From IMG/VR virus record IMGVR_UViG_3300029258_003221, positions 62,001 to 126,000 of that record: a DNA stretch of 64,000 nt; one strand, 5' to 3'. Of this stretch, positions 1,481 to 15,975 are shown piece after piece. The notes under the pieces were generated by a model. It searched no databases, was not told where the DNA came from, and saw only the letters and a program-made list of their open reading frames with translations. The stretch's first letter is position 1. Each line of letters begins with the position of its first letter. The position numbers were made by a program, and so were the translations under genes.

Positions 1481-2287
1481 TCACAAGTTACTCATATCTC
1501 CATCCCATCCAGATTGCTGCGTGGAAAGAGGTTTGTAAAAAGGGCATTTGACACGAAAATCACATCTTTTACAGTGATGACCAACATTTCCCCAAACTTT
1601 ATCCGGGTCAGATTGTTCAATTCTTTTGAATGTCTTCAAAAGCTCTTGTTCAACTTTTATTAATGTTGATTCTGTGAAAGTCGCCGCTACTAAACTTCCA
1701 CCATCCACGTAATACAAACCTGCTTTAATGTTTTCAGGTTCAATTTCAAACTCTCGTTGTACCGCTCTTGCATAAACACACAATTGAAGATCCTGTGTGA
1801 TGGTTTTTCTTGTTTTTCTCCATCGACCTTTCTTGGTTGTTTTGTAATCTATGATCCAAGCTTTGTTGCCTTTAATGATCAAGCGGTCGATAAATCCTTT
1901 GACAAAACGTCCGTGAGGAGGATCAAGATCGTAGTAAATCTCATGTTCAACAATCCCATCTGTCCCCATGCTATCCATCAGTTTTTGAATGGATCTCAAA
2001 TCTTTGTTGAGTCGTCTTTGATATTCTGCTGGAAGCTTTTCAGGGGCTGTAACGCCTTTTTCCAGTTCAATTTTTCCTTTCAAAACATCAGTGGTTACAT
2101 CACCCAAAGGGATTTCTGCTTTGTGCTCAACAAAATGTTCAGCTATTTTGTGTATGATTTTTCCATACGTGAAGTAGAAAGGCTCTTCATCGTCTCTTTC
2201 TACTTTGAGATGATATTGATATTTGTACTTCTGTTGGCATTGATCGTAAGTATTTTTTCGGCTGACCGATATGTGATTGATATCCAT
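1481..2287 (-). CDS. PD-(D/E)XK exonuclease, Cas4/RecB-like (Fe-S)
   Basis: GFIDRL, IIDYKT and QLCVY motifs; N-terminal Cys plus C-terminal CxxCxxxxxC. Confidence 0.88.
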   Translation of the reverse strand: MDINHISVSRKNTYDQCQQKYKYQYHLKVERDDEEPFYFTYGKIIHKIAEHFVEHKAEIPLGDVTTDVLKGKIELEKGVTAPEKLPAEYQRRLNKDLRSIQKLMDSMGTDGIVEHEIYYDLDPPHGRFVKGFIDRLIIKGNKAWIIDYKTTKKGRWRKTRKTITQDLQLCVYARAVQREFEIEPENIKAGLYYVDGGSLVAATFTESTLIKVEQELLKTFKRIEQSDPDKVWGNVGHHCKRCDFRVKCPFYKPLSTQQSGWDGDMSNL

Positions 2288-2317
2288 AGAGTTTCCTAAT
2301 CTTTTTACGAGATGCTA

Positions 2318-2346
2318 TTGCAACATCTCTACGTCATCGATATTAT
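2318..2346 (+). promoter_or_regulatory. sigma70-type promoter for primase
   Basis: TTGCAA-17 nt-TATTAT. Confidence 0.5.
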
Positions 2347-2381
2347 CGTCAATCTTAGAAAAATACACAAGAGGAATTGTA

Positions 2382-3437
2382 ATGGCGGTCGATTATGACT
2401 CGTTTTTAAATTGGGCGACTGATCGCTTTGGGGAATCAAACATCAAATTCCGCAAAGGGGGACGAGAAATTTGCACCCACAGTTTCTTTGTAGACGGTCA
2501 TCCTGATTTTCCTGATGGTGATCACAAATTTAAACTCTGGATGAATCCAGACGGTGGGAAAAACGAGCTTGAAGGAGGAGCTTACCGTTGTTGGTATACA
2601 GATCATATGGGATCATTGATTTCCCTTGTCAGCATTGTTGATAAAGTTCCATATGATGTTGCGGCAGATATTATCTGTGACGAAATTCCCCTTCGAGCTT
2701 TGGAAAAAAAAGTTCATGATTTTTACAGCGTCAAACAAGATGATCCTCAAGAAACCATAGAAGAAATTAAACAAGAGCTGGAATTCCCACCAGACACATA
2801 TAAAATCGAAGAAGTTCGAGGTCATTGGATGGGAGCACGTGCGTTAGAATATCTTGCCAGTCGAAAAATTCCATCTCAGGGATTTTATGTTTGTATTGAC
2901 GGTGATTACAGAAATCGCCTTGTCATTCCATATTACAACAAAGCAGGTGAATTGTTTTATTACAATTGCCGAACATTAGATAAGAACCCAAAAACCTTGA
3001 GGTATATGAAGCCACCTCCTGAAGATGCAGATCAGGAAAATGTTCTTTATTTCCCTGAATGGCCTGCGGCAGGAAGCAAAATTTATATCACAGAAGGTGA
3101 ATTTGATGCTTTCACTTTATGGTTGTCTGGCTTTTATGGCGTTGCCTGTGGCGGAAAATTTCTTTCATCATCACAAATTGAAATGATTCGTGATTACAAA
3201 GTAGTTTTAGCATTTGATAGCGATGATGCAGGTGAACAGGCTTTGTTGAATATTGGTGAAACTTTGTTGGCTGATGGCTTTCAGGACATGCAGTATGTTA
3301 GACCACCTAAAGTTTTCAAAGACTGGAATAAGCTTTTAGAGCAAAGAAATATCGATACCCTAAAAGCTTATATCCAGCGTTTTGAAAAACCGTACAATAG
3401 TTGGACGGTCAATTCGTTGACTGCCAAAAGGCTTTAG
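2382..3437 (+). CDS. DNA primase (TOPRIM; DnaG/T4 gp61-like)
   Basis: YRNRLVIP, YITEGEFDA, FDSDDAG and KDWN motifs; GAGGA RBS before ATG2382. Confidence 0.9.
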   Translation: MAVDYDSFLNWATDRFGESNIKFRKGGREICTHSFFVDGHPDFPDGDHKFKLWMNPDGGKNELEGGAYRCWYTDHMGSLISLVSIVDKVPYDVAADIICDEIPLRALEKKVHDFYSVKQDDPQETIEEIKQELEFPPDTYKIEEVRGHWMGARALEYLASRKIPSQGFYVCIDGDYRNRLVIPYYNKAGELFYYNCRTLDKNPKTLRYMKPPPEDADQENVLYFPEWPAAGSKIYITEGEFDAFTLWLSGFYGVACGGKFLSSSQIEMIRDYKVVLAFDSDDAGEQALLNIGETLLADGFQDMQYVRPPKVFKDWNKLLEQRNIDTLKAYIQRFEKPYNSWTVNSLTAKRL

Positions 3438-3590: not shown

Positions 3591-4085
3591 ATGCATTCAA
3601 AAACAATAGAACAACTTCAATATTTTGTGGGAAAAGTTTGTACTGTTCTCACCTCACCTGTAAACCGTGAATTTGATGAGCTAAGAGCACGGGAGCATTT
3701 TGTGCTTCGTGTTGGGGCAATTAACCTTGATGGAATCTGGGGAACTCATCCCGGAAGTGGGATGACCAGCTTTTTTCAATGGTCGCCCAGTTTAATTGGG
3801 ATATGTGAAGAAATTGAGCTTGATCCAAATAATCCAGAACATGCTCAAATGATTGAACAATATGAGAAACAAACTGGACAGAAGATCAAAAGCGACATTT
3901 CTTCCCCGGTACCAACTAAGAAAAAAGAAAAAGATTTGGTGCAGCTAAAAGAGCCACCAAAAAAACAAACGGCACCTGATGAACAAGTGCCGTTTGTTGA
4001 CATTTCAAATTTAGAAAAGCTCGCTGCTCAAACTAAAATGCAATATGATCAATATGATTCAGTCAGAGATAAGCTTTCCCCTTAA
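3591..4085 (+). CDS. hypothetical protein
   Basis: 164-aa ORF filling the gap between neighbouring genes. Confidence 0.65.
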   Translation: MHSKTIEQLQYFVGKVCTVLTSPVNREFDELRAREHFVLRVGAINLDGIWGTHPGSGMTSFFQWSPSLIGICEEIELDPNNPEHAQMIEQYEKQTGQKIKSDISSPVPTKKKEKDLVQLKEPPKKQTAPDEQVPFVDISNLEKLAAQTKMQYDQYDSVRDKLSP

Positions 4086-6131
4086 ATCTTTCACTCTTTC
4101 TCCTATTGATTGCGTCCTTCTTCTGACTCGGTCACCTAAAGGGCTACTTGAAGATTGGGGCATTTGAGGAATTGATGATTGCGTTCCACCAACTTCTGAA
4201 GAAGTTTCTGGATCAGTTTCTGATCCGGTTTTTAGTTCTTCAATTTTCTTATCCACTTTGTCATTGATGGCCATTCTTGCTTCGGCATTTTCAAATTCAT
4301 CATATGATTCTTCTTCTAGGTCTTGTATTGCCATTAGAATTTCAAGTTCGAATTCAGGGTCCATTTCGACTCCAGCTTGTTCGAATTCTTCCATTGCACC
4401 TTTGAAGAGATCATGATTTTTGTATTTGCCCCATGGGGTATCATCTTCTTCAGGAGTTTCTTCAGGAACATCTTCTACAGGTTCATTTTCAGAACTTTCT
4501 GAATCTTGAGGCGTAGGCACGCTTTCAGTATCTCCTAAATCTTCAGAAGCTTTCTTTTGTTTTTGTGCTTCTTTTTCCTGATTCATCCTGTCAATTTGTT
4601 TTTCTAAATCGCTTTTTTCAGGCTCTTGTTCATTTGAATCTTCTGGAGCATTTACATTTGTAGTGTTTGCTACTTCTTCGCCTTTATCTTCACCTTTATC
4701 GATAGCTTGTTTTACTGCGACTTCTTCTGGCGTCTTTGCTTTTACATAAGGAATTTTAAACCCATACATTCCAGACACATGACCAAGTAAGCTTAATGCC
4801 CTTGCCTTGGCAGTTCCATTTGGCTCCCATCTCAGTTTATTTCTAGCCGCTTCATGATTTTCAAGTCCATAATGAGCAACTATTGCATCAAGAACAGCAT
4901 TGGTTACTTTGACCCAAGAGGTATTTGTTCCTGCAATAAAACCAGCGGCCCCTTGTTGGAATCTAGGATCATTTGGTGCTATTTTAGCACCAAATTGTTG
5001 AAGTATTTTGTCTACTGCTTGTTTGCTGGTTTTGCCTACAACATGCGGAGACCAATCATCATCGATATCACTTCCAGCCAAAGGTTCTTGAGGCAAATCA
5101 CCTTGTCCATCGCCTTCAATAGGTTCTTCCTCAGCAGCAACATTTATTTTGCTGGGCATAACAGTAGCTCCGGCACTGTCAATAGGTGGATCAACAGGTG
5201 AATCAGGGGAACCTTCAGGCGAAACAGGTGCTGGTGAATCAGGTGTTCCTTCTGGTGAAACAGGTGCTGGTGCATTTGGTGCAGAAGGTGTTGGTGTTGG
5301 TGAGCCAATACCGGCAACAAGCTTTGGCAGTTTTTTATTGACATAGGCAATGAGTGCTTTTTTGACCTTTTCAATTTCACCAACAATGCTGTTGTTTCTT
5401 TCTAACAGAACTTCATTGACGCTTTCCATTGTAGGATCGTCATGAATCAACCTTCTTGCACCACGAGCAATACCTTTGCCAATATTTTTAGCAGAAGCTA
5501 TTGGGTGAGTGAAAAGTTGCTTCCAAAAACTCTTTGCTGGAGTTGACCCTTTGCCAGTAGGACCACCCATTGGTGCAGGGCCTGTAGGCGCAGGGCTACC
5601 AGAGGGAGCTGATCCTCCAGAGGAGGTTGGTCCACCGCCCGTTGGTGCAGGACCAGATGGAGCTGACCCGCCACCCATTGGACTACCTCCAGAAGGTGCT
5701 GGGCCACTGCCCATTGGTCCACCAGATGGTGGAGCACCATAATTTCCCATAGCACTGGAAACTTTTTTGGCAAGATCGTCCATGTATTTTGCAATACGTC
5801 TGTTAAGCTTTTCTCCCCATTTATCGACTTTTGGATTACCTGTTCCGGCAGGAGCAGCATCTTCAAGAAGTGCAATAATGCCTGATCTATGTTCGTCTAT
5901 GATTGAGTAAACCAGATTCTTACATTCACTTTGCTCTTCTGCTAGAAACTTTTCCAAATAAAAATCAGGCAATTTATGTTCTGAAAGAATTGTATTTGGC
6001 AATCTTGTGTTTTCATAGATTTTCAACTTGAGCAAATCCAGATGCATATTAATAGCATCTTCTATACTTACGTTGTTTTGAACTATACTTTCAGAAAGTG
6101 TTTTTTGTCGATATTCAGATAAGCTTAACAT
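4059..6131 (-). CDS. Pro/Gly-rich, acidic low-complexity protein, possibly head core/internal protein
   Basis: GGxAPSG and PAPVSPEG repeats; many LxE-type sites; CATAAATA at 6157-6164. Confidence 0.6.
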   Translation of the reverse strand: MLSLSEYRQKTLSESIVQNNVSIEDAINMHLDLLKLKIYENTRLPNTILSEHKLPDFYLEKFLAEEQSECKNLVYSIIDEHRSGIIALLEDAAPAGTGNPKVDKWGEKLNRRIAKYMDDLAKKVSSAMGNYGAPPSGGPMGSGPAPSGGSPMGGGSAPSGPAPTGGGPTSSGGSAPSGSPAPTGPAPMGGPTGKGSTPAKSFWKQLFTHPIASAKNIGKGIARGARRLIHDDPTMESVNEVLLERNNSIVGEIEKVKKALIAYVNKKLPKLVAGIGSPTPTPSAPNAPAPVSPEGTPDSPAPVSPEGSPDSPVDPPIDSAGATVMPSKINVAAEEEPIEGDGQGDLPQEPLAGSDIDDDWSPHVVGKTSKQAVDKILQQFGAKIAPNDPRFQQGAAGFIAGTNTSWVKVTNAVLDAIVAHYGLENHEAARNKLRWEPNGTAKARALSLLGHVSGMYGFKIPYVKAKTPEEVAVKQAIDKGEDKGEEVANTTNVNAPEDSNEQEPEKSDLEKQIDRMNQEKEAQKQKKASEDLGDTESVPTPQDSESSENEPVEDVPEETPEEDDTPWGKYKNHDLFKGAMEEFEQAGVEMDPEFELEILMAIQDLEEESYDEFENAEARMAINDKVDKKIEELKTGSETDPETSSEVGGTQSSIPQMPQSSSSPLGDRVRRRTQSIGERVKDLRGKLISD

Positions 6132-6171: not shown

Positions 6172-6654
6172 TTAAGACTTGGGAGGCATATACTCTCCGA
6201 TTTTCTTCAATGCCATTAAATTTGAATCATAAGATTGAAACTGACTAGGCAAGTATTGATATGAAAGCCTGTCAAAAACCTCAGATTTATCCTCTGGCAC
6301 ATCAAAATAAACATGCCTTCCTCTTTTGCCAATTACTTTCAACCCTATGGCGTTTGGTCGATATTCGTGCATGAGAAGATAAGCAGCCACACCAAGATCA
6401 GAAACAACTTTGTTGTTCTCATTTTCTGGTGGTTCACATTCATTGATTTTCTTCAAAAACATCAAGCAGGAATCAAAGGTATAGAATTCATTAGGTGGCT
6501 GGTACTCCAGCACCAAATTGTCAAATTCTACCATTTCTTCTTCACTTGAGCATTCAAAGTAAATCGATCTGCCTTTTTTCCCTATAACGACATATCCATG
6601 CATAAGGATGTACGCTGCCACCCCTAAATCATTCACGAATTTATGTCTTGCCAT
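6172..6654 (-). CDS. protein with two tandem DUF5659-like (putative winged-helix) domains
   Basis: Internal duplication VxDLGVAAYxLMH...VIGKxGRxxYF...FxxxDSxLMxLKKI. Confidence 0.6.
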   Translation of the reverse strand: MARHKFVNDLGVAAYILMHGYVVIGKKGRSIYFECSSEEEMVEFDNLVLEYQPPNEFYTFDSCLMFLKKINECEPPENENNKVVSDLGVAAYLLMHEYRPNAIGLKVIGKRGRHVYFDVPEDKSEVFDRLSYQYLPSQFQSYDSNLMALKKIGEYMPPKS

Positions 6655-6675: not shown

Positions 6676-8802
6676 TCATTCTATTGGCTGACAGTTTTCA
6701 GCAGCAATCAAACAACCTTTTGCCACTGAATAAACTGGATCTTTAGGTCTGATGACACTGCCGATTTCAATTGGAAGATCAGCGTTTTTGAGAACATCTC
6801 TAAACATATCATCAAAACCCGGAGGACTTGATGTGCCACCAGCAACAACAATGTCAACTGGATGATCAAGTCTGGCTTTTTTCTCATGTTCAATTAAACC
6901 CTGTTTGATTCCAGCAACAGTCTTTTGAATCATGAGTTCGTATTGTGTTTTAATTGCTCTTTCGACAAGAGAAACAGGCTCTTTCGATAAATCAATTTTT
7001 GTTTTTTCTTTGTTAATGAAGGCAATTGTTTCACCAGTTGCCTTAGCAGATTGTTTATCAATCCAGTCGCCACTGTTGACAATGGCAAAGGTAAAGACTT
7101 CTGCACCATAAAGTCCGAACGCAACATTAACCATTCCTGCTCCGCAGTTGTGAATAGTCAGTTGTGGACCAGAGAAAGAATGATCTCCCGGAACTTGTAA
7201 ATCGTAAACTTTACCCTCGTATTCTTCGTGTTCAATTGCTTGAACTCTACCGCAGCAAAATCCGTCTTCAAGGAAAATTGATTCTTTGAAACAACCGTTG
7301 TCGCAATTTGTTTCATTCATATTTTGGACAAGTGAAGAACAAATTTTCTTACCAGCAACACTGACCGTCCACTCCATCTTTTTTCCAAAAATGATCCTAT
7401 TTTCTTGTTTAAGAATATGTTCTCTAGGTTCTCTCCAACCGACACTAGATGCAAAACCAATTCTGGAAAATAATTGTTTAGCCAGAAGTATGAGCTTTGT
7501 GTTTGTGTTTCCGAATACGATTTGATCTTCGGAGATCGTTCCATCCGCTCGAACCATTCCACACAGAAGGTTGAAGCATTCTGAGTTTGTCAATCTGTCG
7601 ATTGTCCATGGGTAATGCTTTTCTCCGCTGTCATCGTAACAGTGGTTTTTCATCCAGTTAACCAAGCCTTGACTGTAACACTTCAATCTTGTGACAGACT
7701 CTCCCTTGCTTGTTTCTGTGGAGTTTTTACCAAATCGTTTCGATAAGATTTCTTTGGCATCCTGCACGTAATCTGTTTCGTGTGCTCCAAAGTCAATTTG
7801 AATACAACCTTCTTTTTCACTGATACTTCCATCTCCCATAAAGTATCCCATGAATCTTTGTAGATTTGGCGTAGATTCAATTCTTTTCTTGTTCCATTTC
7901 TTAGAACAAGTTGTTCTTTCGCAGAGATTGATTGAAGGTCTTGTGGCGTTTCTATTTTGCCCAATAATTGGTTCACCAACTATATCTCCAATTTCTATTT
8001 CTTCACAACCAACCCAATTCCATTTCCCGTTTCTTTTGACATACAATTCATGATTATCCACAAATTTGTACTCTTCTGTGTTGTTTGAATAACCTGCGAT
8101 TTGAATTTTTGTCATAATTCCATCAAAAGGCTTGACTATGACTTTGTTAATTTCACTCCATCGACCTTTGTGTGTAATAACCTTATCGCCTTCCTTGACT
8201 TTTTCAATTTCAACAATGCCTTTATCAGTGTATATTTTAGTGCCCGGACATAAACATGAAATGCCGATGCCCGTAAACATCTTTTCTGATAATTCAGAAT
8301 AAACCAGAGCCATTCCTTCATTCAAAGGACGTGCATCTAGTGTCAGCCCTTCTGGTGATTTGTAGGCTTTGAATACAGCTTCAAGAACCTTTGAGTGATA
8401 ATCTGCATCTGTTTCAGCATTGATGGCATTTGCCGGAACGCTGTAGTAGACAAGTTCTTTATCGTTTGTGACATTATCTAACAAACTGTGCATCATGATG
8501 CTCATGATTTGAAAAGCATCGCTTTCGGCTGGGTTAACACAACCGTCTTTCATTGGGCGACTTAGTTCAAGCTGAGTCATTGTGTAAGCCATGTTTATGG
8601 CAGCTTCACCCAATGCATAAGCAGTATTTGCATCTTCTCGTTGAATCAGCGGCACGCCAGCCTTTTTCATCATATTAAAGACAAATGGATTGTCTAATGA
8701 AAACTTCAAAAAGGCATTGACTTCTTTTTTGAAGACAAGATCTTTTTCGTCATTCCTTTTGCAGCTAATCAAATTGTATGTTCCACAATCAAACCCTATC
8801 AA
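6676..8802 (-). CDS. actin-fold ATPase (volactin-like) interrupted by an intein
   Basis: Phosphate-1 GFDCGTYN, connect NEGMALVYSEL, phosphate-2 GIS|CGAG, adenosine VAGGTS, connect-2 YSVAKG; spliced length 338 aa. Confidence 0.88.
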   Translation of the reverse strand: MIGFDCGTYNLISCKRNDEKDLVFKKEVNAFLKFSLDNPFVFNMMKKAGVPLIQREDANTAYALGEAAINMAYTMTQLELSRPMKDGCVNPAESDAFQIMSIMMHSLLDNVTNDKELVYYSVPANAINAETDADYHSKVLEAVFKAYKSPEGLTLDARPLNEGMALVYSELSEKMFTGIGISCLCPGTKIYTDKGIVEIEKVKEGDKVITHKGRWSEINKVIVKPFDGIMTKIQIAGYSNNTEEYKFVDNHELYVKRNGKWNWVGCEEIEIGDIVGEPIIGQNRNATRPSINLCERTTCSKKWNKKRIESTPNLQRFMGYFMGDGSISEKEGCIQIDFGAHETDYVQDAKEILSKRFGKNSTETSKGESVTRLKCYSQGLVNWMKNHCYDDSGEKHYPWTIDRLTNSECFNLLCGMVRADGTISEDQIVFGNTNTKLILLAKQLFSRIGFASSVGWREPREHILKQENRIIFGKKMEWTVSVAGKKICSSLVQNMNETNCDNGCFKESIFLEDGFCCGRVQAIEHEEYEGKVYDLQVPGDHSFSGPQLTIHNCGAGMVNVAFGLYGAEVFTFAIVNSGDWIDKQSAKATGETIAFINKEKTKIDLSKEPVSLVERAIKTQYELMIQKTVAGIKQGLIEHEKKARLDHPVDIVVAGGTSSPPGFDDMFRDVLKNADLPIEIGSVIRPKDPVYSVAKGCLIAAENCQPIE
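7147..8256 (-). mobile_element. 370-aa intein with LAGLIDADG homing endonuclease
   Basis: N-terminus CLCPGT, block B VDNHEL, YFMGDGS and GMVRADGT motifs, VYDLQV...IHN followed by +1 Cys. Confidence 0.95.
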
Positions 8803-9044
8803 TTTTCCTCCTTAACCTCTTTGCCAAAGTTCAAAGTTCCACCTGATATGAAATTAGGAATAATTGGTTTTACCTCTTCATCATCAAGAAATGAGGTCTT
8901 TTTCGTTTCTTTTTGAGTTGTTTCAGCAGAAGCGACAACAAGACCGTCAGCATTGACATTAATTGTAATATCAAGTGAAATTTCTATTTCTCCCTCTTTT
9001 GGGACCACTTTGATCTTTGTGGCTGGTGTATATCTTTGAACCAT
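8799..9044 (-). CDS. small hypothetical protein translationally coupled to the actin gene
   Basis: Stop overlaps the actin start; ACTAAATA (9053-9060) lies 8 nt upstream of ATG9044. Confidence 0.65.
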   Translation of the reverse strand: MVQRYTPATKIKVVPKEGEIEISLDITINVNADGLVVASAETTQKETKKTSFLDDEEVKPIIPNFISGGTLNFGKEVKEEN

Positions 9045-9051
9045 AGTGTAG

Positions 9052-10047
9052 TTATTTAGTTGTATCAGGCCATCTTTCAAACATTTTGTCTACTTGAGTT
9101 AATATCATTTCGCTTGTAATTTCTGTCAGACAGGGTTTTGGGTTCTTTTTCGTCTTAGGGCAATTTCCCCAACTGTAACATGGCCCACACGTCCACGTAG
9201 GATCATCATCTCTGTGTCTTTGAACAAGGAAGAAATCATACCACTCCCCATATTTTTTTCCGTCAGCGAAAGTAAAAATTCCTGTAAGCGGCTTGCCCAT
9301 TCCCCCAGAACAGTGAAATGCCGCCGTGTCCACACTGACCACATAATCAGCTTCATGCAACACAGCCATCCATAAACGCAACTGATGTTGAGTTCCCACG
9401 GTAGGAACATTATTTTGCTCAAGAATCTCTATTGGGAAATAATGAAGACCCAAAGCATAGCAGTTTCTCTCATGCAGTCCGTCAATTAGTCCCATCAACT
9501 GATGATCCAGCAGGTTTTTATTAAACATTGCAGAAACCGGGCAAACAACAACGCAAGGCCCTTCTCGATCACGATATTCTTCGATTAATTCTCTCCCTTT
9601 TGCCTTTTCGTCTTCTGTGAGCTTAATGTGCATGTTGTGCCTTGTCAGCTTCATGCCACAGTGTTCAGACCAGATATCACTTCGGTTAGGTGCGGGAAAA
9701 GGAGCAAGTTTCATTTCCATTCTGCCACAAGCAGTGGTTGTATTGTAATGTGCTATATAATTTCTTCGATCAACCTGTGCACAGTCCAGCACTTTATCAA
9801 TAAAAGGGTGATCTTTAACCGCTGGGTGGTACATGGCGGGACAAGCGAAGTGTATTTCACAATCCGGCATTAACAACTTAATGTCCTCAAACATCATTCG
9901 ATGCATAAAAATATCACCAAGGCCACCTACATTTCTTGTGATCAGAATTCTATTTCGCTTTTCATAAAAATCAAATAAGTTTAGTGTTCGTTTGATTTTG
10001 TCTGGCCGACGACGTTCAACACGTTGACTGATTATTTTTCTTGGCAT
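9052..10047 (-). CDS. GT9 (heptosyltransferase-like) glycosyltransferase
   Basis: GGLGDIF, VVSVDTAAFHCSGGMGKP, C-terminal CxPC...C...C. Confidence 0.85.
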   Translation of the reverse strand: MPRKIISQRVERRRPDKIKRTLNLFDFYEKRNRILITRNVGGLGDIFMHRMMFEDIKLLMPDCEIHFACPAMYHPAVKDHPFIDKVLDCAQVDRRNYIAHYNTTTACGRMEMKLAPFPAPNRSDIWSEHCGMKLTRHNMHIKLTEDEKAKGRELIEEYRDREGPCVVVCPVSAMFNKNLLDHQLMGLIDGLHERNCYALGLHYFPIEILEQNNVPTVGTQHQLRLWMAVLHEADYVVSVDTAAFHCSGGMGKPLTGIFTFADGKKYGEWYDFFLVQRHRDDDPTWTCGPCYSWGNCPKTKKNPKPCLTEITSEMILTQVDKMFERWPDTTK

Positions 10048-11911: not shown

Positions 11912-13633
11912 ATGGAACAGGTTCTTTATCCAATACCCGGAAAATACAACTTAAATGACCCCGTTGATGTCTCTGTCATCATTCCTTTGTACAACAGCAG
12001 AAATGTCGTTAAAGATCAAATTCTGAGATGGGTCTCAGATTATGATTTGAAAGTTGAGATCATTTATGTTGATGACAAATGCCCCAAGCAATCAAAAAAT
12101 GCTGTCTATGAATCTTGGAACAAGCGACGTGACAAACATCAATATTTAGTCAAACTTGTTTGCTCTCATGTAAACCGAGGCTATGGCGGTGCCAATAATT
12201 TAGGTGCTCATTTTGCTAAAGGCAAGTATTTGATCTTTTTAAATTCAGATACTGTTGTTACGCCAAACTGGATCAAACCTATGATCGATGTTTTGGAAGA
12301 TGAGTCAGTAGGTATTGTAGGTAACTTGCAGCTCAAAGAAGGTGGACAATGGCACGGCACAATTGACAGTGCTGGTTCTGAGTGGTCTTGGGACCATATG
12401 AATTTCATGCACATTGGTCGTCATATTTACTATGGCAAATTGCTCAAGAGACCAATTGACATCAACAAATGTCCTCCAAAAATTCTTCAACTCGAAGAAC
12501 GAGAAATGGTAACTGGTTGTTGCTTTGGAATTAGAAAAGAACTTTATGATTATATTGGAGGATTCAATCTCAATTACCGAGTAGGTTACTGGGAGGACAG
12601 TGAAATCTGTCTAACAGTTCGATCTCTTGGTTACAAGGTTATGTTCCAGCCAAATTCAGTCATCTATCACAAGCTCCACCATTCAGAATCTGGCGGTCAT
12701 GACTTCCATGATTTCAACAAACAATACTTCTTCAACAAATGGGTGGATACCGGCGAGATCGACAAATACGTGGAGGCCAAACGTCAACTCAAACAAACCA
12801 AGGTCTCCAAGATACTTGTTCAAAGAAAAGGAGCTAATGGAGATGTGTTAGTGGCAACATCAATTCTGCCGGGCTTGAGAGAGAAATACCCTGATGCCAA
12901 AATCGATTTTCACACTGTTTGCCCCAAGGTTTTGATAGACAACCCATACATCGATGAAGTCGTATCAAAAACAAAAGCTGATGCGACCTCCTATCACCTG
13001 AGATATAACCTTGATTATGCCTACGAGAGAATGCCTTTGGTTAACATCAGAGAATCTTATGGCATTGAATCAAACATCGAACCACAAGACCCATTCATTG
13101 GTTATTCTGCTGTTGAAGGTTTGCCTGATGATCCTTATGTGGTTATACACGCAGGAAAAACTGCTTGGGTTGGACGTAACTGGAGTGAAGGGGTTGGGTT
13201 CATCCCTTTATCATCTATGATTGAAAAACAACTAGGATACAAAATTGTTTGGGTTGGAGTCGAAGGAGACAATGGCCTTCATGGTCTATATGATTTTCGA
13301 GGGAAGACGACATTTCAACAATTGGCAACAATCATGAAAAATGCTGCTTTGTTTGTTGGAATTGATTCATTCCCATTTCATGTTGCACAAGCTGTGAATA
13401 CACCGGGAGTGACGTTCTTTGGTTCAATCCTTCCCGAAACAAGAATTTACAGAGAGAACATGAATGCAGTTACTGCTGAGAGCTTGAAATGTTTAGGTTG
13501 TCACCACAGAAAAGTAGCACCAGCCACTGTAACAGATGAATGTGAAACAGGAACTTTAGAATGTGAAACTATGGTTACTCTTTCAAAGTTCTACGGAAAG
13601 ATAAAGGAGAAATTATGCAGCCTGAATGTTTAG
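11912..13633 (+). CDS. GT2-GT9 fusion glycosyltransferase
   Basis: VSVIIPLYN, YVDD, FLNSD, YWEDSE (GT2); GANGDVL, FVGIDSFPFHVA (GT9). Confidence 0.9.
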   Translation: MEQVLYPIPGKYNLNDPVDVSVIIPLYNSRNVVKDQILRWVSDYDLKVEIIYVDDKCPKQSKNAVYESWNKRRDKHQYLVKLVCSHVNRGYGGANNLGAHFAKGKYLIFLNSDTVVTPNWIKPMIDVLEDESVGIVGNLQLKEGGQWHGTIDSAGSEWSWDHMNFMHIGRHIYYGKLLKRPIDINKCPPKILQLEEREMVTGCCFGIRKELYDYIGGFNLNYRVGYWEDSEICLTVRSLGYKVMFQPNSVIYHKLHHSESGGHDFHDFNKQYFFNKWVDTGEIDKYVEAKRQLKQTKVSKILVQRKGANGDVLVATSILPGLREKYPDAKIDFHTVCPKVLIDNPYIDEVVSKTKADATSYHLRYNLDYAYERMPLVNIRESYGIESNIEPQDPFIGYSAVEGLPDDPYVVIHAGKTAWVGRNWSEGVGFIPLSSMIEKQLGYKIVWVGVEGDNGLHGLYDFRGKTTFQQLATIMKNAALFVGIDSFPFHVAQAVNTPGVTFFGSILPETRIYRENMNAVTAESLKCLGCHHRKVAPATVTDECETGTLECETMVTLSKFYGKIKEKLCSLNV

Positions 13634-14490: not shown

Positions 14491-15975
14491 ATGTCCATGT
14501 ATCAAGGTAAACACTTCATTTCAGGACTTTTTAGCCAAGAATCAGCGAATGCATTTGTTCGTGCACAAAATCCAGCGAATAAAGAAGAGTATGGCCTTTT
14601 TCCCAAGGCAGAAAAACATACAGTTGAAAAAGCTGTTAAAGCTGCAAGAGACGCCTTTCCAGAGTGGAGAAAGTTAAGCCGAGTGAAACGTGCCGAACTC
14701 TTTGATACTTTGGCACAATTGGTTAAGAGAGACCACGACATTCTCAAGAGAATGATCTCCGATGAAACTGGTAAGAATCTCAATGAATCTCACGCTGAAG
14801 TTATTGAGGCTTTGCATATGTGCCAAGTAGCTGCGGCGTCGGGTCGCCAGCCATATGGTGAGTGTATCGCATCTGAAATCAGCGAAAAAGACGCTCGTGT
14901 CATTAGAAAGCCTAAAGGGGTTGTTGCTGTCATTTCCCCTTGGAACTTCCCTTTAGCAATTGGGTCATTTTGGTCTTCTGCACCAGCTTTAGTTGAAGGA
15001 AACACTGTTGTTCATAAGCCTTCTGAACTTACCCCAATGATTGCTCAAAAAATGGCAGAACTTTATGATGAAGCAGGTTTTCCTCCGGGTGTGTTCAATC
15101 TTGTGCATGGAGATGGAGAGACTGGCGATCACTTAGTTAGAGCTGATGTAGAAGTCATTCTATTCACGGGAAGTGCAGAAGTAGGTCAATTGATTCGACA
15201 ACATTGTGCAACCACTTGGAATAAAACATGCAGTACAGAATGTGGATCAAAATCTGCTGTTATTGTGTTTGATGATGCAGATCAAGAATTGGCTTTGAAT
15301 GCTTGTCTTGCGAGTGCTTTTAAACTTTCTGGGCAAAGATGTGTATCTGGCAGTAGAATTCTTGTTCAAAGAGGAATTTTGGATACCTTTGCTAAAAAGT
15401 TTGTAGACAAAGTTAGAATAGAAGCAACAACCGGAGCACCAACTGAAAATAATCCTCCGATGTACGGACCATTGATTAGTGCTGAACAAAAAGACAAAGT
15501 TTTGTTTTATAATAAAATGGTTCGAGATGACGAGGATGCTCAGGTTTTGTATGATGGAAATGAAGCTGGCTCACCTGTAGAAGGTCATTTTTTGAGACCA
15601 TTTGTTTTTCAATGTGAATGGGGCGACAAAAGATTTTTCAAAGAAGAAGTATTTGGACCACATGCTGCAATTATCCCATTTGATTCAGTAGATGATGCTA
15701 TTCGTATTTACAATGATACGGATTTTGGTTTGGCATTAGGTATAATCACAAACGATTACAGAATTCACAGGAAATGTGAACAGGAATGTACGACAGGCAT
15801 GCTGTATATTAATGGCTCTTCAATTGGGGCAGAATCTCATTTGCCGTTTTCTTCATGGAAGAAAAGTGGAAATTCAGCAAGTGCTTCAGCAACATGGAAG
15901 GCAGTTACGCACACAACAGCTATTACAACAAATTATGAAAAAGGAATTACCTTTGCTCAAGGAATGACCATGTAG
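14491..15975 (+). CDS. NAD(P)-dependent aldehyde dehydrogenase
   Basis: PWNFP, KPSE, FTGS, catalytic E (TECGSKS), catalytic C (SGQRC), EEVFGP. Confidence 0.95.
   Translation: MSMYQGKHFISGLFSQESANAFVRAQNPANKEEYGLFPKAEKHTVEKAVKAARDAFPEWRKLSRVKRAELFDTLAQLVKRDHDILKRMISDETGKNLNESHAEVIEALHMCQVAAASGRQPYGECIASEISEKDARVIRKPKGVVAVISPWNFPLAIGSFWSSAPALVEGNTVVHKPSELTPMIAQKMAELYDEAGFPPGVFNLVHGDGETGDHLVRADVEVILFTGSAEVGQLIRQHCATTWNKTCSTECGSKSAVIVFDDADQELALNACLASAFKLSGQRCVSGSRILVQRGILDTFAKKFVDKVRIEATTGAPTENNPPMYGPLISAEQKDKVLFYNKMVRDDEDAQVLYDGNEAGSPVEGHFLRPFVFQCEWGDKRFFKEEVFGPHAAIIPFDSVDDAIRIYNDTDFGLALGIITNDYRIHRKCEQECTTGMLYINGSSIGAESHLPFSSWKKSGNSASASATWKAVTHTTAITTNYEKGITFAQGMTM

What the first reader, a model, noticed from the sequence alone, without database searches (positions are those of the whole stretch)
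7147..8256. Homing intein inserted in the phosphate-2 loop of an actin
Seen: a full LAGLIDADG intein between GIGIS and CGAG, inside the ATP-binding motif, using the Cys as +1 nucleophile. Known: inteins concentrate in replication and nucleotide-metabolism enzymes and terminases; cytoskeletal hosts are unusual. Inference: the actin is conserved and important enough in this lineage to sustain homing, and splicing could gate its activity.
Basis: partly seen in the sequence, partly recalled or inferred. Interest (0 to 1): 0.65.

Follow-up and report, generated by a model that had tools for sequence, protein, structure and literature searches.

The report
Homing intein in phage actin-like protein
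A mobile, self-splicing protein insert (a LAGLIDADG homing intein) interrupts the ATP-binding loop of an actin-like protein in a huge bacteriophage; comparison with hundreds of related phage genes shows the insert still moves between them, so it is an ordinary kind of element in a host gene I found no paper describing.

Summary
Window 7147-8256 (minus strand) encodes a 370-residue class-1 intein, from Cys1 to His-Asn, followed by Cys+1. It has two LAGLIDADG motifs and lies in frame in a 708-codon ORF (6676-8802).

- **Host gene.** The exteins match Pfam Volactin (PF25216) seamlessly: profile positions 3-172, then 174-321. An intein-less homologue folds as a MamK/MreB/actin-type ATPase. The insertion falls between the Asp-equivalent Ser and the next residue of the phosphate-2 motif.
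- **Genome.** It is a fragment (234,631 bp, 44% complete) of a huge phage.
- **Distribution.** About 120 protein clusters (90% identity) carry this intein at the same site. At least 2,822 relatives lack it.
- **Evidence for homing.**
  - Presence is scattered on the extein tree (at least 24-35 gains or losses).
  - Inteins 97.5% identical sit in hosts only 35% identical.
  - Phages about 97% identical at the DNA level differ by one clean 1,101-nt insertion, with a hyper-divergent 265-nt tract just 3' of it (p = 1e-10). That tract is the expected mark of co-conversion.
- **The +1 position.** Empty alleles mostly have Phe. All invaded alleles have Cys, as do a scattered minority of empty ones, which are probably loss scars.

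Splicing, DNA cleavage and any gating of the host protein are untested. I found no paper on an intein in an actin-like protein. I rate it a new member of a known kind, of moderate interest.

The parts
6676..8802 (-). Precursor gene: 708 codons plus stop, encoding an actin-like (Volactin-family) protein interrupted by an intein. TTG start with AAGGAGG 4-5 nt upstream.
8257..8802 (-). N-extein, aa 1-182, ending TGIGIS. It carries the phosphate-1 motif (GFDCGT).
   Evidence: Pfam Volactin profile 3-172, E = 5e-31; coordinates checked.
7147..8256 (-). Intein, 370 aa (aa 183-552 of the precursor), class 1: Cys1 ... His369-Asn370.
7942..8256 (-). N-terminal splicing (HINT) region, about intein aa 1-105. 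It holds block A (CLCPGTK, 8236-8256) and the block B Thr28-His29 (8170-8175).
   Evidence: Hint_2 hit on aa 1-40. His29 is conserved in 102/104 alleles (that call's printed intein numbers are one too low). Beta-rich in the model. The domain border is approximate.
7297..7941 (-). LAGLIDADG homing-endonuclease domain, about intein aa 106-320. Motif 1 is FMGYFMGDG (7828-7854, Asp142). Motif 2 is LLCGMVRADG (7540-7569, Asp238).
   Evidence: LAGLIDADG_3 E = 7e-12. The Asp residues are conserved in 100/104 and 101/104 alleles. I-DmoI-like fold. PI-PkoII profile hit. The domain border is approximate.
7147..7296 (-). C-terminal splicing region with blocks F and G: GKVYDLQVPGDH (7180-7215) and the end LTIHN.
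   Evidence: Intein_splicing hit. Asp352 104/104, His359 97/104, Asn370 104/104, penultimate His 83/104.
7144..7146 (-). Cys+1 codon (TGC), the first residue of the C-extein and the predicted nucleophile of the second splicing step. Most intein-less alleles have Phe (TTT/TTC) at this position.
6679..7146 (-). C-extein, aa 553-708, starting CGAGMVNV (the rest of phosphate-2). It carries the adenosine motif VVAGGTSSPPGF. The stop codon is 6676-6678.
   Evidence: Pfam Volactin profile 174-321, E = 1e-28; alignment to MamK.

Best explanation
The ORF 6676-8802 encodes the precursor of a phage actin-like ATPase (Pfam Volactin family, MamK/MreB-like fold). It is interrupted by a canonical class-1 intein that carries a two-motif LAGLIDADG homing endonuclease.

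**Inferred mechanism (standard intein chemistry).**
1. Cys1 makes an N-S acyl shift at the Ser182-Cys183 bond.
2. Cys+1 (aa 553) attacks that thioester.
3. Asn370 cyclises and releases the intein.
4. An S-N shift leaves a 338-residue actin-like protein that reads ...TGIGIS-CGAGMVN... across the phosphate-2 hairpin.

**Consequence for the host protein.** The insert sits one residue before the Gly-rich turn that should hold the nucleotide phosphates. The unspliced precursor is therefore very probably inactive, and the gene works only because the intein splices.

**Mobility.** The freed intein, or the precursor, is predicted to cut intein-less alleles at the same conserved site. Repair from the intein-bearing copy during co-infection then copies in the intein together with some flanking sequence, including the Cys+1 codon. 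This turns the usual Phe into Cys.

**What is shown and what is inferred.** Shown here are the anatomy, the fold, the site, the distribution among alleles, lateral transfer and a co-conversion tract. Inferred are splicing, DNA cleavage and the activity of this particular copy.
For: **Anatomy.** All splicing residues are conserved across 104 full-length alleles: Cys1, Asn370 and Cys+1 in 104/104, block-B His in 102/104, and the two LAGLIDADG Asp in 100 and 101 of 104.

**Folds.**
- The intein model has pLDDT 93.8. Its best PDB matches are the TliVMA, PI-SceI, PI-PkoII and PI-PfuI inteins, plus I-DmoI for the endonuclease part.
- The model of the intein-less homologue P0117 has pLDDT 93.7. Its best matches are MamK, MreB, BeeR and actin.
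- In that model the site lies at the end of strand 181-186, before the turn at 187-190. It aligns with MamK VD|IGAGTTD.

**The host gene is still under constraint.** Twenty columns, including D6, G8, T9, S185, G187, G189, N192, G288 and G289, are invariant across 98 sequences, 40 of which carry the intein.

**Mobility.**
- About 120 clusters carry the intein at the identical site (107 full-length rows checked; further hits). At least 2,822 relatives lack it.
- Intein presence needs at least 35 changes on the extein tree, 24 of them forced by well-supported branches.
- Between the two deep host clades the exteins are 32% identical on average (maximum 39%), but the inteins average 51%. P0024 and P0076 share a 97.5% identical intein in exteins only 34.7% identical, and both exteins of each protein belong to its own clade.
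- Loci L144-L146 (with intein) and L066/L067 (without) are about 97% identical over 6-8 kb and differ by one 1,101-nt insertion. The 265 nt just 3' of the intein hold 31 mismatches (11.7%), against 2.7% elsewhere, p = 1e-10.
- Amino-acid differences within 10 residues of the junction are enriched in pairs of an intein allele and a Phe allele: 10.5% against 4.4% in controls, p = 3e-4.
- Four measured mini-inteins of 140-163 aa (P0075, P0078, P0112, P0113), and two more judged from protein length and Pfam domains (P0250, P0251), mark the decay stage of the homing cycle.
Against: - No experiment shows splicing or cleavage.
- For the window's own copy, the nearest other intein is only 77% identical. 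I found no nearly identical phage with an empty site, so this copy could be an old, vertically inherited resident with a dead endonuclease.
- Block B reads I-T-H rather than the textbook TxxH spacing.
- All comparison data are metagenomic assemblies.
- The trees are FastTree only.
- dS is saturated, so no dN/dS ratio could be calculated.
- The divergent tract 3' of the intein could in principle reflect unrelated recombination, although it abuts the intein exactly.
Confidence: 0.9

Rival explanations
1. The window's copy is a resident intein that still splices but no longer homes. On this view it is inherited vertically in this phage lineage, and its endonuclease is inactive or has no targets left.
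For: The closest other inteins are 72-77% identical, and their exteins diverge about as much (window against L021: intein 0.77, extein 0.75). That pattern fits co-descent within this sub-clade. I found no nearly identical empty allele for this phage. In its clade every allele, with or without the intein, already has Cys at +1.
Against: Both catalytic Asp residues and both LAGLIDADG helices are intact. The endonuclease domain is conserved across more than 100 alleles although dS is saturated. In the window's own clade, intein-bearing and empty Cys alleles are interleaved as sisters: L019 with P0034, L027 with P0006, L015 with P0041. That points to recent gain or loss there as well.
Confidence: 0.25
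2. The intein is kept because splicing is conditional, for example sensitive to redox state or metals through Cys1, Cys3 and Cys+1. In that case it would time the assembly of the phage actin-like protein during infection.
For: The site lies in the nucleotide-binding hairpin, so the precursor should be inactive. Both nucleophiles are Cys, and the N-terminus of the window's intein reads C-L-C; many alleles read C-L-C too. Conditional splicing of Cys/Cys inteins is established for other hosts (general knowledge, not tested here).
Against: At least 2,822 relatives, including nearly identical phages, do without the intein. Mini-inteins and at least 24 gains or losses show the turnover of a selfish element rather than a retained regulator. 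Cys3 is often replaced by Val in other alleles. No data bear on regulation.
Confidence: 0.1
3. The host is an actin-fold ATPase that does not form filaments, such as a chaperone-like or kinase-like enzyme. In that case 'cytoskeletal host' would be a misnomer.
For: Sequence similarity to solved actins is weak: E = 0.2 by single sequence, and the MamK family only at E = 5e-9 against a 400-bit cut-off. The canonical phosphate-2 Asp is an invariant Ser. No polymerisation data exist.
Against: Pfam Volactin scores 203 bits against a 35-bit cut-off. Volactin itself forms dynamic filaments in Haloferax volcanii (PMC10869688). The best Foldseek matches listed (50 rows) are nearly all filament formers: MamK, MreB, BeeR, ParM, actin, FtsA and actin-related proteins. 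No Hsp70 or sugar kinase appears among them.
Confidence: 0.15
4. The feature is an artefact: an assembly chimera, or a free-standing endonuclease gene mis-joined to two gene halves.
For: The sequence comes from a metagenomic assembly.
Against: The reading frame is continuous, with canonical junctions. The identical protein occurs on independent contigs. The same architecture occurs in more than 100 clusters from JGI, ENA, Logan and NCBI sources.
Confidence: 0.01

Closest known systems
VMA-type and archaeal polymerase inteins with LAGLIDADG endonucleases (PI-SceI, TliVMA/PhoVMA, PI-PkoII, PI-PfuI)
   Same: The two-part architecture is the same: a HINT splicing domain split by a two-motif LAGLIDADG endonuclease. 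The Cys1 ... His-Asn / Cys+1 chemistry is the same. Like them, it sits in a nucleotide-binding motif of an ATPase or polymerase. These are the best structural matches (7qsu E = 7e-17, 1vde, 2cw7, 1dq3) and the best profile match (2cw7 E = 2e-12).
   Different: Foldseek sequence identity is only 11-16%, and single-sequence phmmer finds no PDB relative. The host protein (actin fold) and the insertion site are different. At 370 aa it is more compact than PI-SceI (454 aa) or PI-PkoII (537 aa).
Phage inteins in portal, terminase, NrdD and methylase genes
   Same: All are phage-borne homing inteins. The closest inteins in deposited phage genomes lie in these genes. The window's own genome also has an intein in its T4-like portal gene.
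   Different: They are only 20-24% identical to this intein. No deposited phage record has an intein in an actin-like gene. Every relative of this intein at E < 1e-38 sits in a Volactin-family host.
Volactin (HVO_2015, Haloferax volcanii), MamK and MreB: prokaryotic actin homologues
   Same: The exteins score well above the Pfam Volactin cut-off. The fold matches MamK, MreB, BeeR and actin. The phosphate-1, phosphate-2 and adenosine motifs are recognisable.
   Different: The gene is encoded by huge phages, on contigs up to 673 kb, not by haloarchaea. Ser replaces the phosphate-2 Asp. The function in infection is unknown, and filament formation is untested. Volactin's described role is in disk-shape formation (PMC10869688).
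The homing cycle of selfish endonuclease elements (invasion, fixation, decay, loss, re-invasion)
   Same: All stages are visible among alleles of one gene: empty sites, full inteins, inteins with altered catalytic residues, mini-inteins and probable loss scars.
   Different: Here the +1 codon acts as a visible marker. Phe in naive alleles becomes Cys on invasion, and Cys seems to persist after loss. This reading is an inference from the codon spectrum and the tree.

Membership tests
Class-1 intein (HINT superfamily) | Cys or Ser as the first residue (block A) | tested here: met
   Cys183 of the precursor (codon 8254-8256); Cys in 104/104 alleles.
Class-1 intein (HINT superfamily) | Block B with a conserved His (textbook TxxH) | tested here: met
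   Thr28-His29 (8170-8175). His in 102/104 and Thr in 100/104 alleles. The Thr is adjacent to the His, not three residues before it, so the spacing departs from the textbook.
Class-1 intein (HINT superfamily) | C-terminal His-Asn (block G) followed by Cys, Ser or Thr at +1 | tested here: met
   The junction reads ...TIHN|C. Asn in 104/104, Cys+1 in 104/104, penultimate His in 83/104 (Lys 12, Ser 8, Arg 1).
Class-1 intein (HINT superfamily) | In-frame insertion in a conserved host protein that also has intein-less homologues | tested here: met
   The Volactin profile is interrupted between positions 172 and 174. Empty alleles include L001, L012-L020, L066 and at least 2,822 clusters.
Class-1 intein (HINT superfamily) | HINT fold | tested here: met
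   AlphaFold model with pLDDT 93.8; Foldseek matches to the TliVMA intein (E = 7e-17) and PI-SceI.
Class-1 intein (HINT superfamily) | Protein splicing demonstrated | not testable with these tools
   Indirect only: the exteins of intein-bearing alleles keep all invariant host residues.
LAGLIDADG homing endonuclease (monomeric, two motifs) | Two LAGLIDADG helices, each ending in a catalytic acidic residue | tested here: met
   FMGYFMGDG (Asp142) and LLCGMVRADG (Asp238). Asp in 100/104 and 101/104 alleles.
LAGLIDADG homing endonuclease (monomeric, two motifs) | Pseudo-dimeric alpha-beta-beta-alpha-beta-beta-alpha fold | tested here: met
   Foldseek matches to I-DmoI (E about 1e-5, target TM 0.57-0.61) and to the endonuclease domains of PI-SceI and PI-PkoII; Pfam LAGLIDADG_3.
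LAGLIDADG homing endonuclease (monomeric, two motifs) | Site-specific cleavage of the empty allele | not testable with these tools
The candidate targets are listed.
LAGLIDADG homing endonuclease (monomeric, two motifs) | Genetic mobility: sporadic distribution, lateral transfer, co-conversion of flanks | tested here: met
   At least 24-35 changes on the extein tree. A 97.5% identical intein in 35% identical hosts. A divergent 265-nt tract abutting the intein in phages about 97% identical, p = 1e-10.
Pfam Volactin (PF25216) / prokaryotic actin homologues | Score above the family's curated cut-off | tested here: met
   202.8 bits for the precursor, and 108.7 and 101.1 bits for the two exteins separately, against a 35-bit cut-off.
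Pfam Volactin (PF25216) / prokaryotic actin homologues | Actin fold with phosphate-1, phosphate-2 and adenosine motifs | tested here: met
   The model of intein-less P0117 has pLDDT 93.7 and matches MamK, MreB, BeeR and actin with TM 0.65-0.75. D6/G8/T9, G187/G189 and G288/G289 are invariant. The phosphate-2 Asp is an invariant Ser in this group.
Pfam Volactin (PF25216) / prokaryotic actin homologues | ATP-dependent filament formation | not testable with these tools
   Known for volactin itself (PMC10869688); not known for the phage proteins.

The most novel reading that the evidence does not exclude
Splicing of this intein is conditional. For instance, a Cys1/Cys3/Cys+1 redox or metal switch could keep the phage actin-like protein inactive until a set point in infection. 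On this reading, some huge phages would have co-opted a selfish element as a post-translational timer of a viral cytoskeleton. In addition, the Phe-to-Cys scar left in the phosphate-2 hairpin would alter nucleotide handling by the filament.
Probability: 0.1. Interest if true: 0.75.

Novelty: new member of a known kind. Interest (0 to 1): 0.5.

Why it matters
**A new kind of host gene.** Inteins are known mostly from replication, repair, nucleotide-metabolism and packaging proteins. An intein family dedicated to an actin-fold protein extends that list. It also fits the rule that inteins settle in the most conserved nucleotide-binding motifs.

**A natural data set for intein dynamics.** The data hold more than 100 invaded alleles and thousands of empty ones, along with mini-inteins, a cross-clade transfer between hosts only 35% identical, and nearly identical phage pairs with a measurable co-conversion tract. 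The +1 codon (Phe against Cys) appears to record invasion and loss. Together these make the homing cycle directly testable in uncultured huge phages.

**A conserved phage gene of unknown function.** The finding also draws attention to a widely conserved actin-like gene of huge phages, and it gives a handle on that gene. If the intein can be shown to splice, the precursor is a natural 'off' form.

**Practical value.** A compact 370-aa Cys/Cys intein and its 140-163-aa mini relatives may interest protein engineers.

Tried and rejected
- **PHROGs on the exteins:** no family.
- **Single-sequence PDB searches:** nothing significant for the intein-less homologue P0117 or for the intein.
- **PDB profile search with A1:** the profile kept the intein columns, so intein and actin hits came out mixed. 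It was still useful for the MamK alignment.
- **dN/dS on four intein-bearing loci:** dS was saturated, so no ratio could be calculated.
- **IMG/VR pairs for co-conversion:** the closest pair of an intein-bearing and an empty locus is only about 79% identical in DNA, too divergent to map a tract.
- **DNA of P0044:** not retrievable. An IMG/VR scan with its N-extein found only empty alleles at 100% identity. I solved this through cluster members P0262 and P0260.
- **P0109 (609 aa):** considered as a different insertion. It is an empty Phe allele run on into a terminase-like ORF, so a gene-call or frameshift artefact.
- **The ~810-aa proteins (P0082 and others):** considered as double-intein alleles. 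They have a roughly 100-aa N-terminal extension.
- **Literature:** six searches (intein with actin-like, MreB, actin homolog, huge phages) found no description of an intein in an actin-like protein. The intein registries themselves are not available here.
- **Off-by-one references:** my extein and intein references (1-183, 554-708, region 184-553) were one residue off the true borders (182|183 and 552|553). This does not affect any result.
- **Joined exteins:**, the exteins were never joined for any search or fold. They were searched apart, by reference, and a natural intein-less homologue was folded instead. The trees used full-length alignments with the intein columns dropped.
- **Not used:** the exhaustive representative search, the reads tools and the complex prediction.
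Full report
**What is there**

The minus strand of window 6676-8802 is one open frame of 708 codons. It starts at a TTG that follows an AAGGAGG ribosome-binding site. They begin CLCPGTK and end LTIHN, and they are flanked by ...TGIGIS and CGAGMVNV....

Pfam finds LAGLIDADG_3 (E = 7e-12), Intein_splicing (1e-8) and Hint_2 (2e-6) in the insert. The two flanks, searched separately by reference, match Volactin (PF25216) at profile positions 3-172 and 174-321 of 321 (E = 5e-31 and 1e-28). The host profile is therefore interrupted without loss or gain of residues.

**The intein**

It has every element of a class-1 intein:
- Cys1.
- Block B Thr28-His29.
- Block F, with YDL and DHSF.
- The terminal His369-Asn370.
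- Cys at +1.

Two LAGLIDADG motifs lie between the splicing halves: FMGYFMGDG with Asp142, and LLCGMVRADG with Asp238.

Conservation in 104 full-length alleles:

| Residue | Alleles that keep it |
|---|---|
| Cys1, Asn370, Cys+1 | 104/104 each |
| Block-B His | 102/104 |
| LAGLIDADG Asp142 / Asp238 | 100/104 and 101/104 |
| Penultimate His | 83/104 (Lys 12, Ser 8, Arg 1) |

An AlphaFold model built on 77 sequences has pLDDT 93.8. Its best PDB matches are endonuclease-bearing inteins: TliVMA 7qsu (E = 7e-17), PI-SceI, PI-PkoII and PI-PfuI. The middle domain matches I-DmoI. A profile search also reaches PI-PkoII at E = 2e-12.

**The host protein and the site**

The genome is an IMG/VR virus record of 234,631 bp, judged 44% complete, so it is a fragment of a huge phage. 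Two deposited huge-phage genomes hold intein-less homologues:
- LR756511, 595 kb, 58% identity over the N-extein.
- LR745208, 485 kb, 29% identity.

The intein-less homologue P0117 is the LR756511 protein. It was modelled on 98 sequences and has pLDDT 93.7. It matches MamK, MreB, BeeR, ParM and actin with TM 0.65-0.75. NCBIfam gives a weak MamK-family hit.

In the model the insertion point, between Ser185 and residue 186, is at the end of strand 181-186. The Gly-rich turn at 187-190 and strand 191-197 follow it. The profile alignment puts S|[C/F]GAGMVN on MamK D-I-G-A-G-T-T-D. The intein therefore sits inside the phosphate-2 motif, right after the residue that replaces the canonical Asp. In this family that residue is an invariant Ser.

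'Actin' should be read as a phage actin-like ATPase of the Volactin/MamK/MreB kind. Volactin itself is a dynamic filament former in Haloferax volcanii (PMC10869688). Polymerisation of the phage protein is untested.

**How common the allele is**

- A word search with the precursor returned 112 other Volactin-family clusters (90% identity). Nearly all are 670-810 aa long.
- In a MAFFT alignment of the 107 full-length ones, 106 carry the insert at the same place (S|CL...N|CG). P0108 is displaced by two codons (see the end of this report). Of the other four hits, two are fragments, P0109 has no intein, and P0108 is that oddity.
- A search restricted to the intein found 15 more clusters. Every hit at E < 1e-38 has a Volactin host. 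The nearest intein in another host, a glycosyltransferase, is 24% identical.
- In deposited phage genomes the nearest inteins are 20-24% identical. They lie in portal, terminase, NrdD and methylase genes.
- At least 2,822 clusters are intein-less relatives, on contigs of up to 673 kb.
- Four mini-inteins measure 140-163 aa (P0075, P0078, P0112, P0113). P0250 and P0251 look the same by protein length and Pfam domains.

**Evidence that it homes**

1. *Scattered distribution.* On a FastTree tree of 264 extein sequences, with the intein and +1 columns dropped, intein presence needs at least 35 changes. Well-supported branches alone force 24 of them. Many sister pairs have one invaded and one empty allele.
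2. *Lateral transfer.* The hosts fall into two deep clades separated by a 100%-supported branch. Between them the exteins are 32% identical on average (maximum 39%), while the inteins average 51%. On the intein tree the clade label changes at least 10 times. P0024 and P0076/P0077 share inteins 97.5% identical in exteins 34.7% identical. Both exteins of each protein belong to its own clade, so these are not junction chimeras.
3. *Nearly identical phage pairs.* Loci L144-L146 (with intein) and L066/L067 (without) have the same gene map. They are about 97% identical over 6-8 kb and differ by a single 1,101-nt insertion. The 265 nt immediately 3' of the intein hold 31 mismatches (11.7%), against 2.7% elsewhere (Fisher p = 1e-10). 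A second pair gives p = 2e-5. At the protein level, P0044 and P0179 are identical over the whole N-extein. All eight of their differences lie in the first 94 residues after the intein. This is the expected footprint of co-conversion during double-strand-break repair from a divergent donor.
4. *Differences near the junction.* In independent close pairs, differences within 10 residues of the junction are enriched when an intein allele is compared with a Phe allele (10.5%). The rate is 4.4% in pairs of empty alleles (p = 3e-4) and 3.4% in comparisons with Cys alleles.

**The +1 position**

- Of 120 empty alleles sampled around LR756511, 109 have Phe, 7 Cys, 3 Tyr and 1 Ala at +1.
- All invaded alleles have Cys.
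- The empty alleles closest to the window (74-80% identical over the N-extein) all have Cys.
- In DNA, the +1 codons of empty alleles are TTT 53, TTC 10, TGT 18, TGC 5, TGG 2 and GCT 1. None encodes Leu, Ile, Val or Ser, although each is one step from Phe.
- Empty Cys alleles are scattered over the tree (17 changes for 23 rows) and often sit next to intein alleles.

My inference is that invasion converts Phe to Cys by co-conversion, and that precise loss of the intein leaves Cys as a scar. The scar may later drift back to an aromatic residue. This is not proven.

**How it most likely works**

The mechanism is standard class-1 splicing: a Cys1 acyl shift, attack by Cys+1, Asn370 cyclisation and an S-N shift. 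It would restore a 338-residue actin-like protein. Forty intein-bearing alleles keep all 20 invariant host residues, which argues that they are spliced and functional. A 370-residue domain inside the phosphate-2 hairpin should block nucleotide binding, so the precursor is probably inactive. That step is inferred.

Nothing here speaks for or against regulated splicing. The rapid turnover and the many intein-free relatives make a selfish element the better reading.

For the window's own copy, current endonuclease activity is uncertain. Both catalytic Asp residues are intact. However, its nearest intein relative is only 77% identical, and I found no nearly identical empty allele.

**Novelty**

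Six full-text searches found no paper describing an intein in an actin-like protein. JGI's automatic annotation does label some copies 'intein/homing endonuclease/actin-like ATPase'. The intein registries could not be consulted.

The element is mechanistically ordinary. What is new is the host family and the insertion site, together with an unusually complete natural record of the homing cycle. I rate it a new member of a known kind, with interest 0.5.

**Method notes**

- The exteins were never joined for a search or a fold. They were searched apart, by reference, and a natural intein-less homologue was folded.
- The trees used full-length alignments with the intein columns removed. Fragments P0071, P0079, P0097 and P0103 and the fused P0109 were left out.
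- My early references were one residue off the true borders, which has no effect on any result.

**One oddity among the intein alleles**

In P0108 the intein seems to sit two codons upstream of the usual site (...TGIS|intein|CGFGAGM...). The native Phe is kept, and the invariant Ser position is replaced.

Noticed in passing
Outside the window: G000:C1:48343-48993 (locus L006, ORF 1-2487 minus, runs off the locus): The same phage genome carries a second intein (Intein_splicing E = 5e-15) inside its T4-like portal protein gp20 (Portal_T4 E = 2e-73). The phage therefore hosts at least two inteins and has a T4-type portal.
   Followed up: partly
Outside the window: G000:C1:33842-34210 (locus L009, ORF 517-2508 minus, 663 aa): Another ORF has a LAGLIDADG_3 match (E = 3e-7) and no other Pfam domain. 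It may be a third intein or an inserted homing endonuclease in an unknown host protein.
   Followed up: partly
window 6172-6654 (-): A 160-aa protein lies directly downstream of the actin-like gene. It is made of two tandem ~75-aa repeats (DLGVAAY.LMH...GK.GR.IYF...LKKI). A 46% identical homologue holds the same position next to the actin-like gene in L066 and L144, but not in L001. The only lead is a DUF5659-like Atlas hit at 0.85. It could be a partner or adaptor of the actin-like protein.
   Followed up: partly
window 4059-6131 (-): A 690-aa low-complexity protein with Pro/Gly/Ser-rich repeats (APSGG..., PAPVSPEG[TS]PDS twice) and an acidic C-terminal part. It has no Pfam hit. L001 encodes a 543-aa protein with a Pro/Ala/Gly-rich stretch two genes downstream of its actin-like gene; I did not test whether the two are related.
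   Followed up: no
window 9052-10047 (-) and 11912-13633 (+): Two glycosyltransferase genes: one GT9-like (weak, E = 2e-4) and one GT2 plus GT9 fusion. The GT9-like gene and a small ORF (8799-9080) keep their place upstream of the actin-like gene in L001, L066 and L144.
   Followed up: partly
window 1481-2287 (-) and 2277-3437 (+): A PD-(D/E)XK nuclease (E = 2e-28) and a Toprim-domain protein (E = 7e-14), probably replication or recombination genes of the phage.
   Followed up: no
Protein P0108 (metagenomic, 702 aa): In this one allele the intein appears shifted two codons upstream (...TGIS|intein|CGFGAGMVN). The native Phe is kept, and the otherwise invariant Ser position is overwritten. It could be an ectopic or slipped repair event.
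   Followed up: partly
Proteins P0029, P0034, P0039, P0041 and others: Twenty-one of 104 alleles replace the penultimate His of the intein with Lys, Ser or Arg, while Asn370 and Cys+1 stay invariant. This suggests sub-lineages that differ in how the Asn cyclisation step is assisted.
   Followed up: no
Loci L012-L143: The +1 codon spectrum of empty alleles is TTT/TTC 63, TGT/TGC 23, TGG 2 and GCT 1, with no Leu, Ile, Val or Ser codons. This suggests that Cys in empty alleles is a scar of intein loss rather than ordinary drift. Trp (TGG) is one step from Cys.
   Followed up: partly
window-wide: Eight of the ten large ORFs tested have no PHROG family at E <= 1e-5, including ORFs of 1,376, 1,043 and 998 aa. 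The only hits were phrog_15577 (14491-15975) and a GtrB-like match (11912-13633).
   Followed up: no
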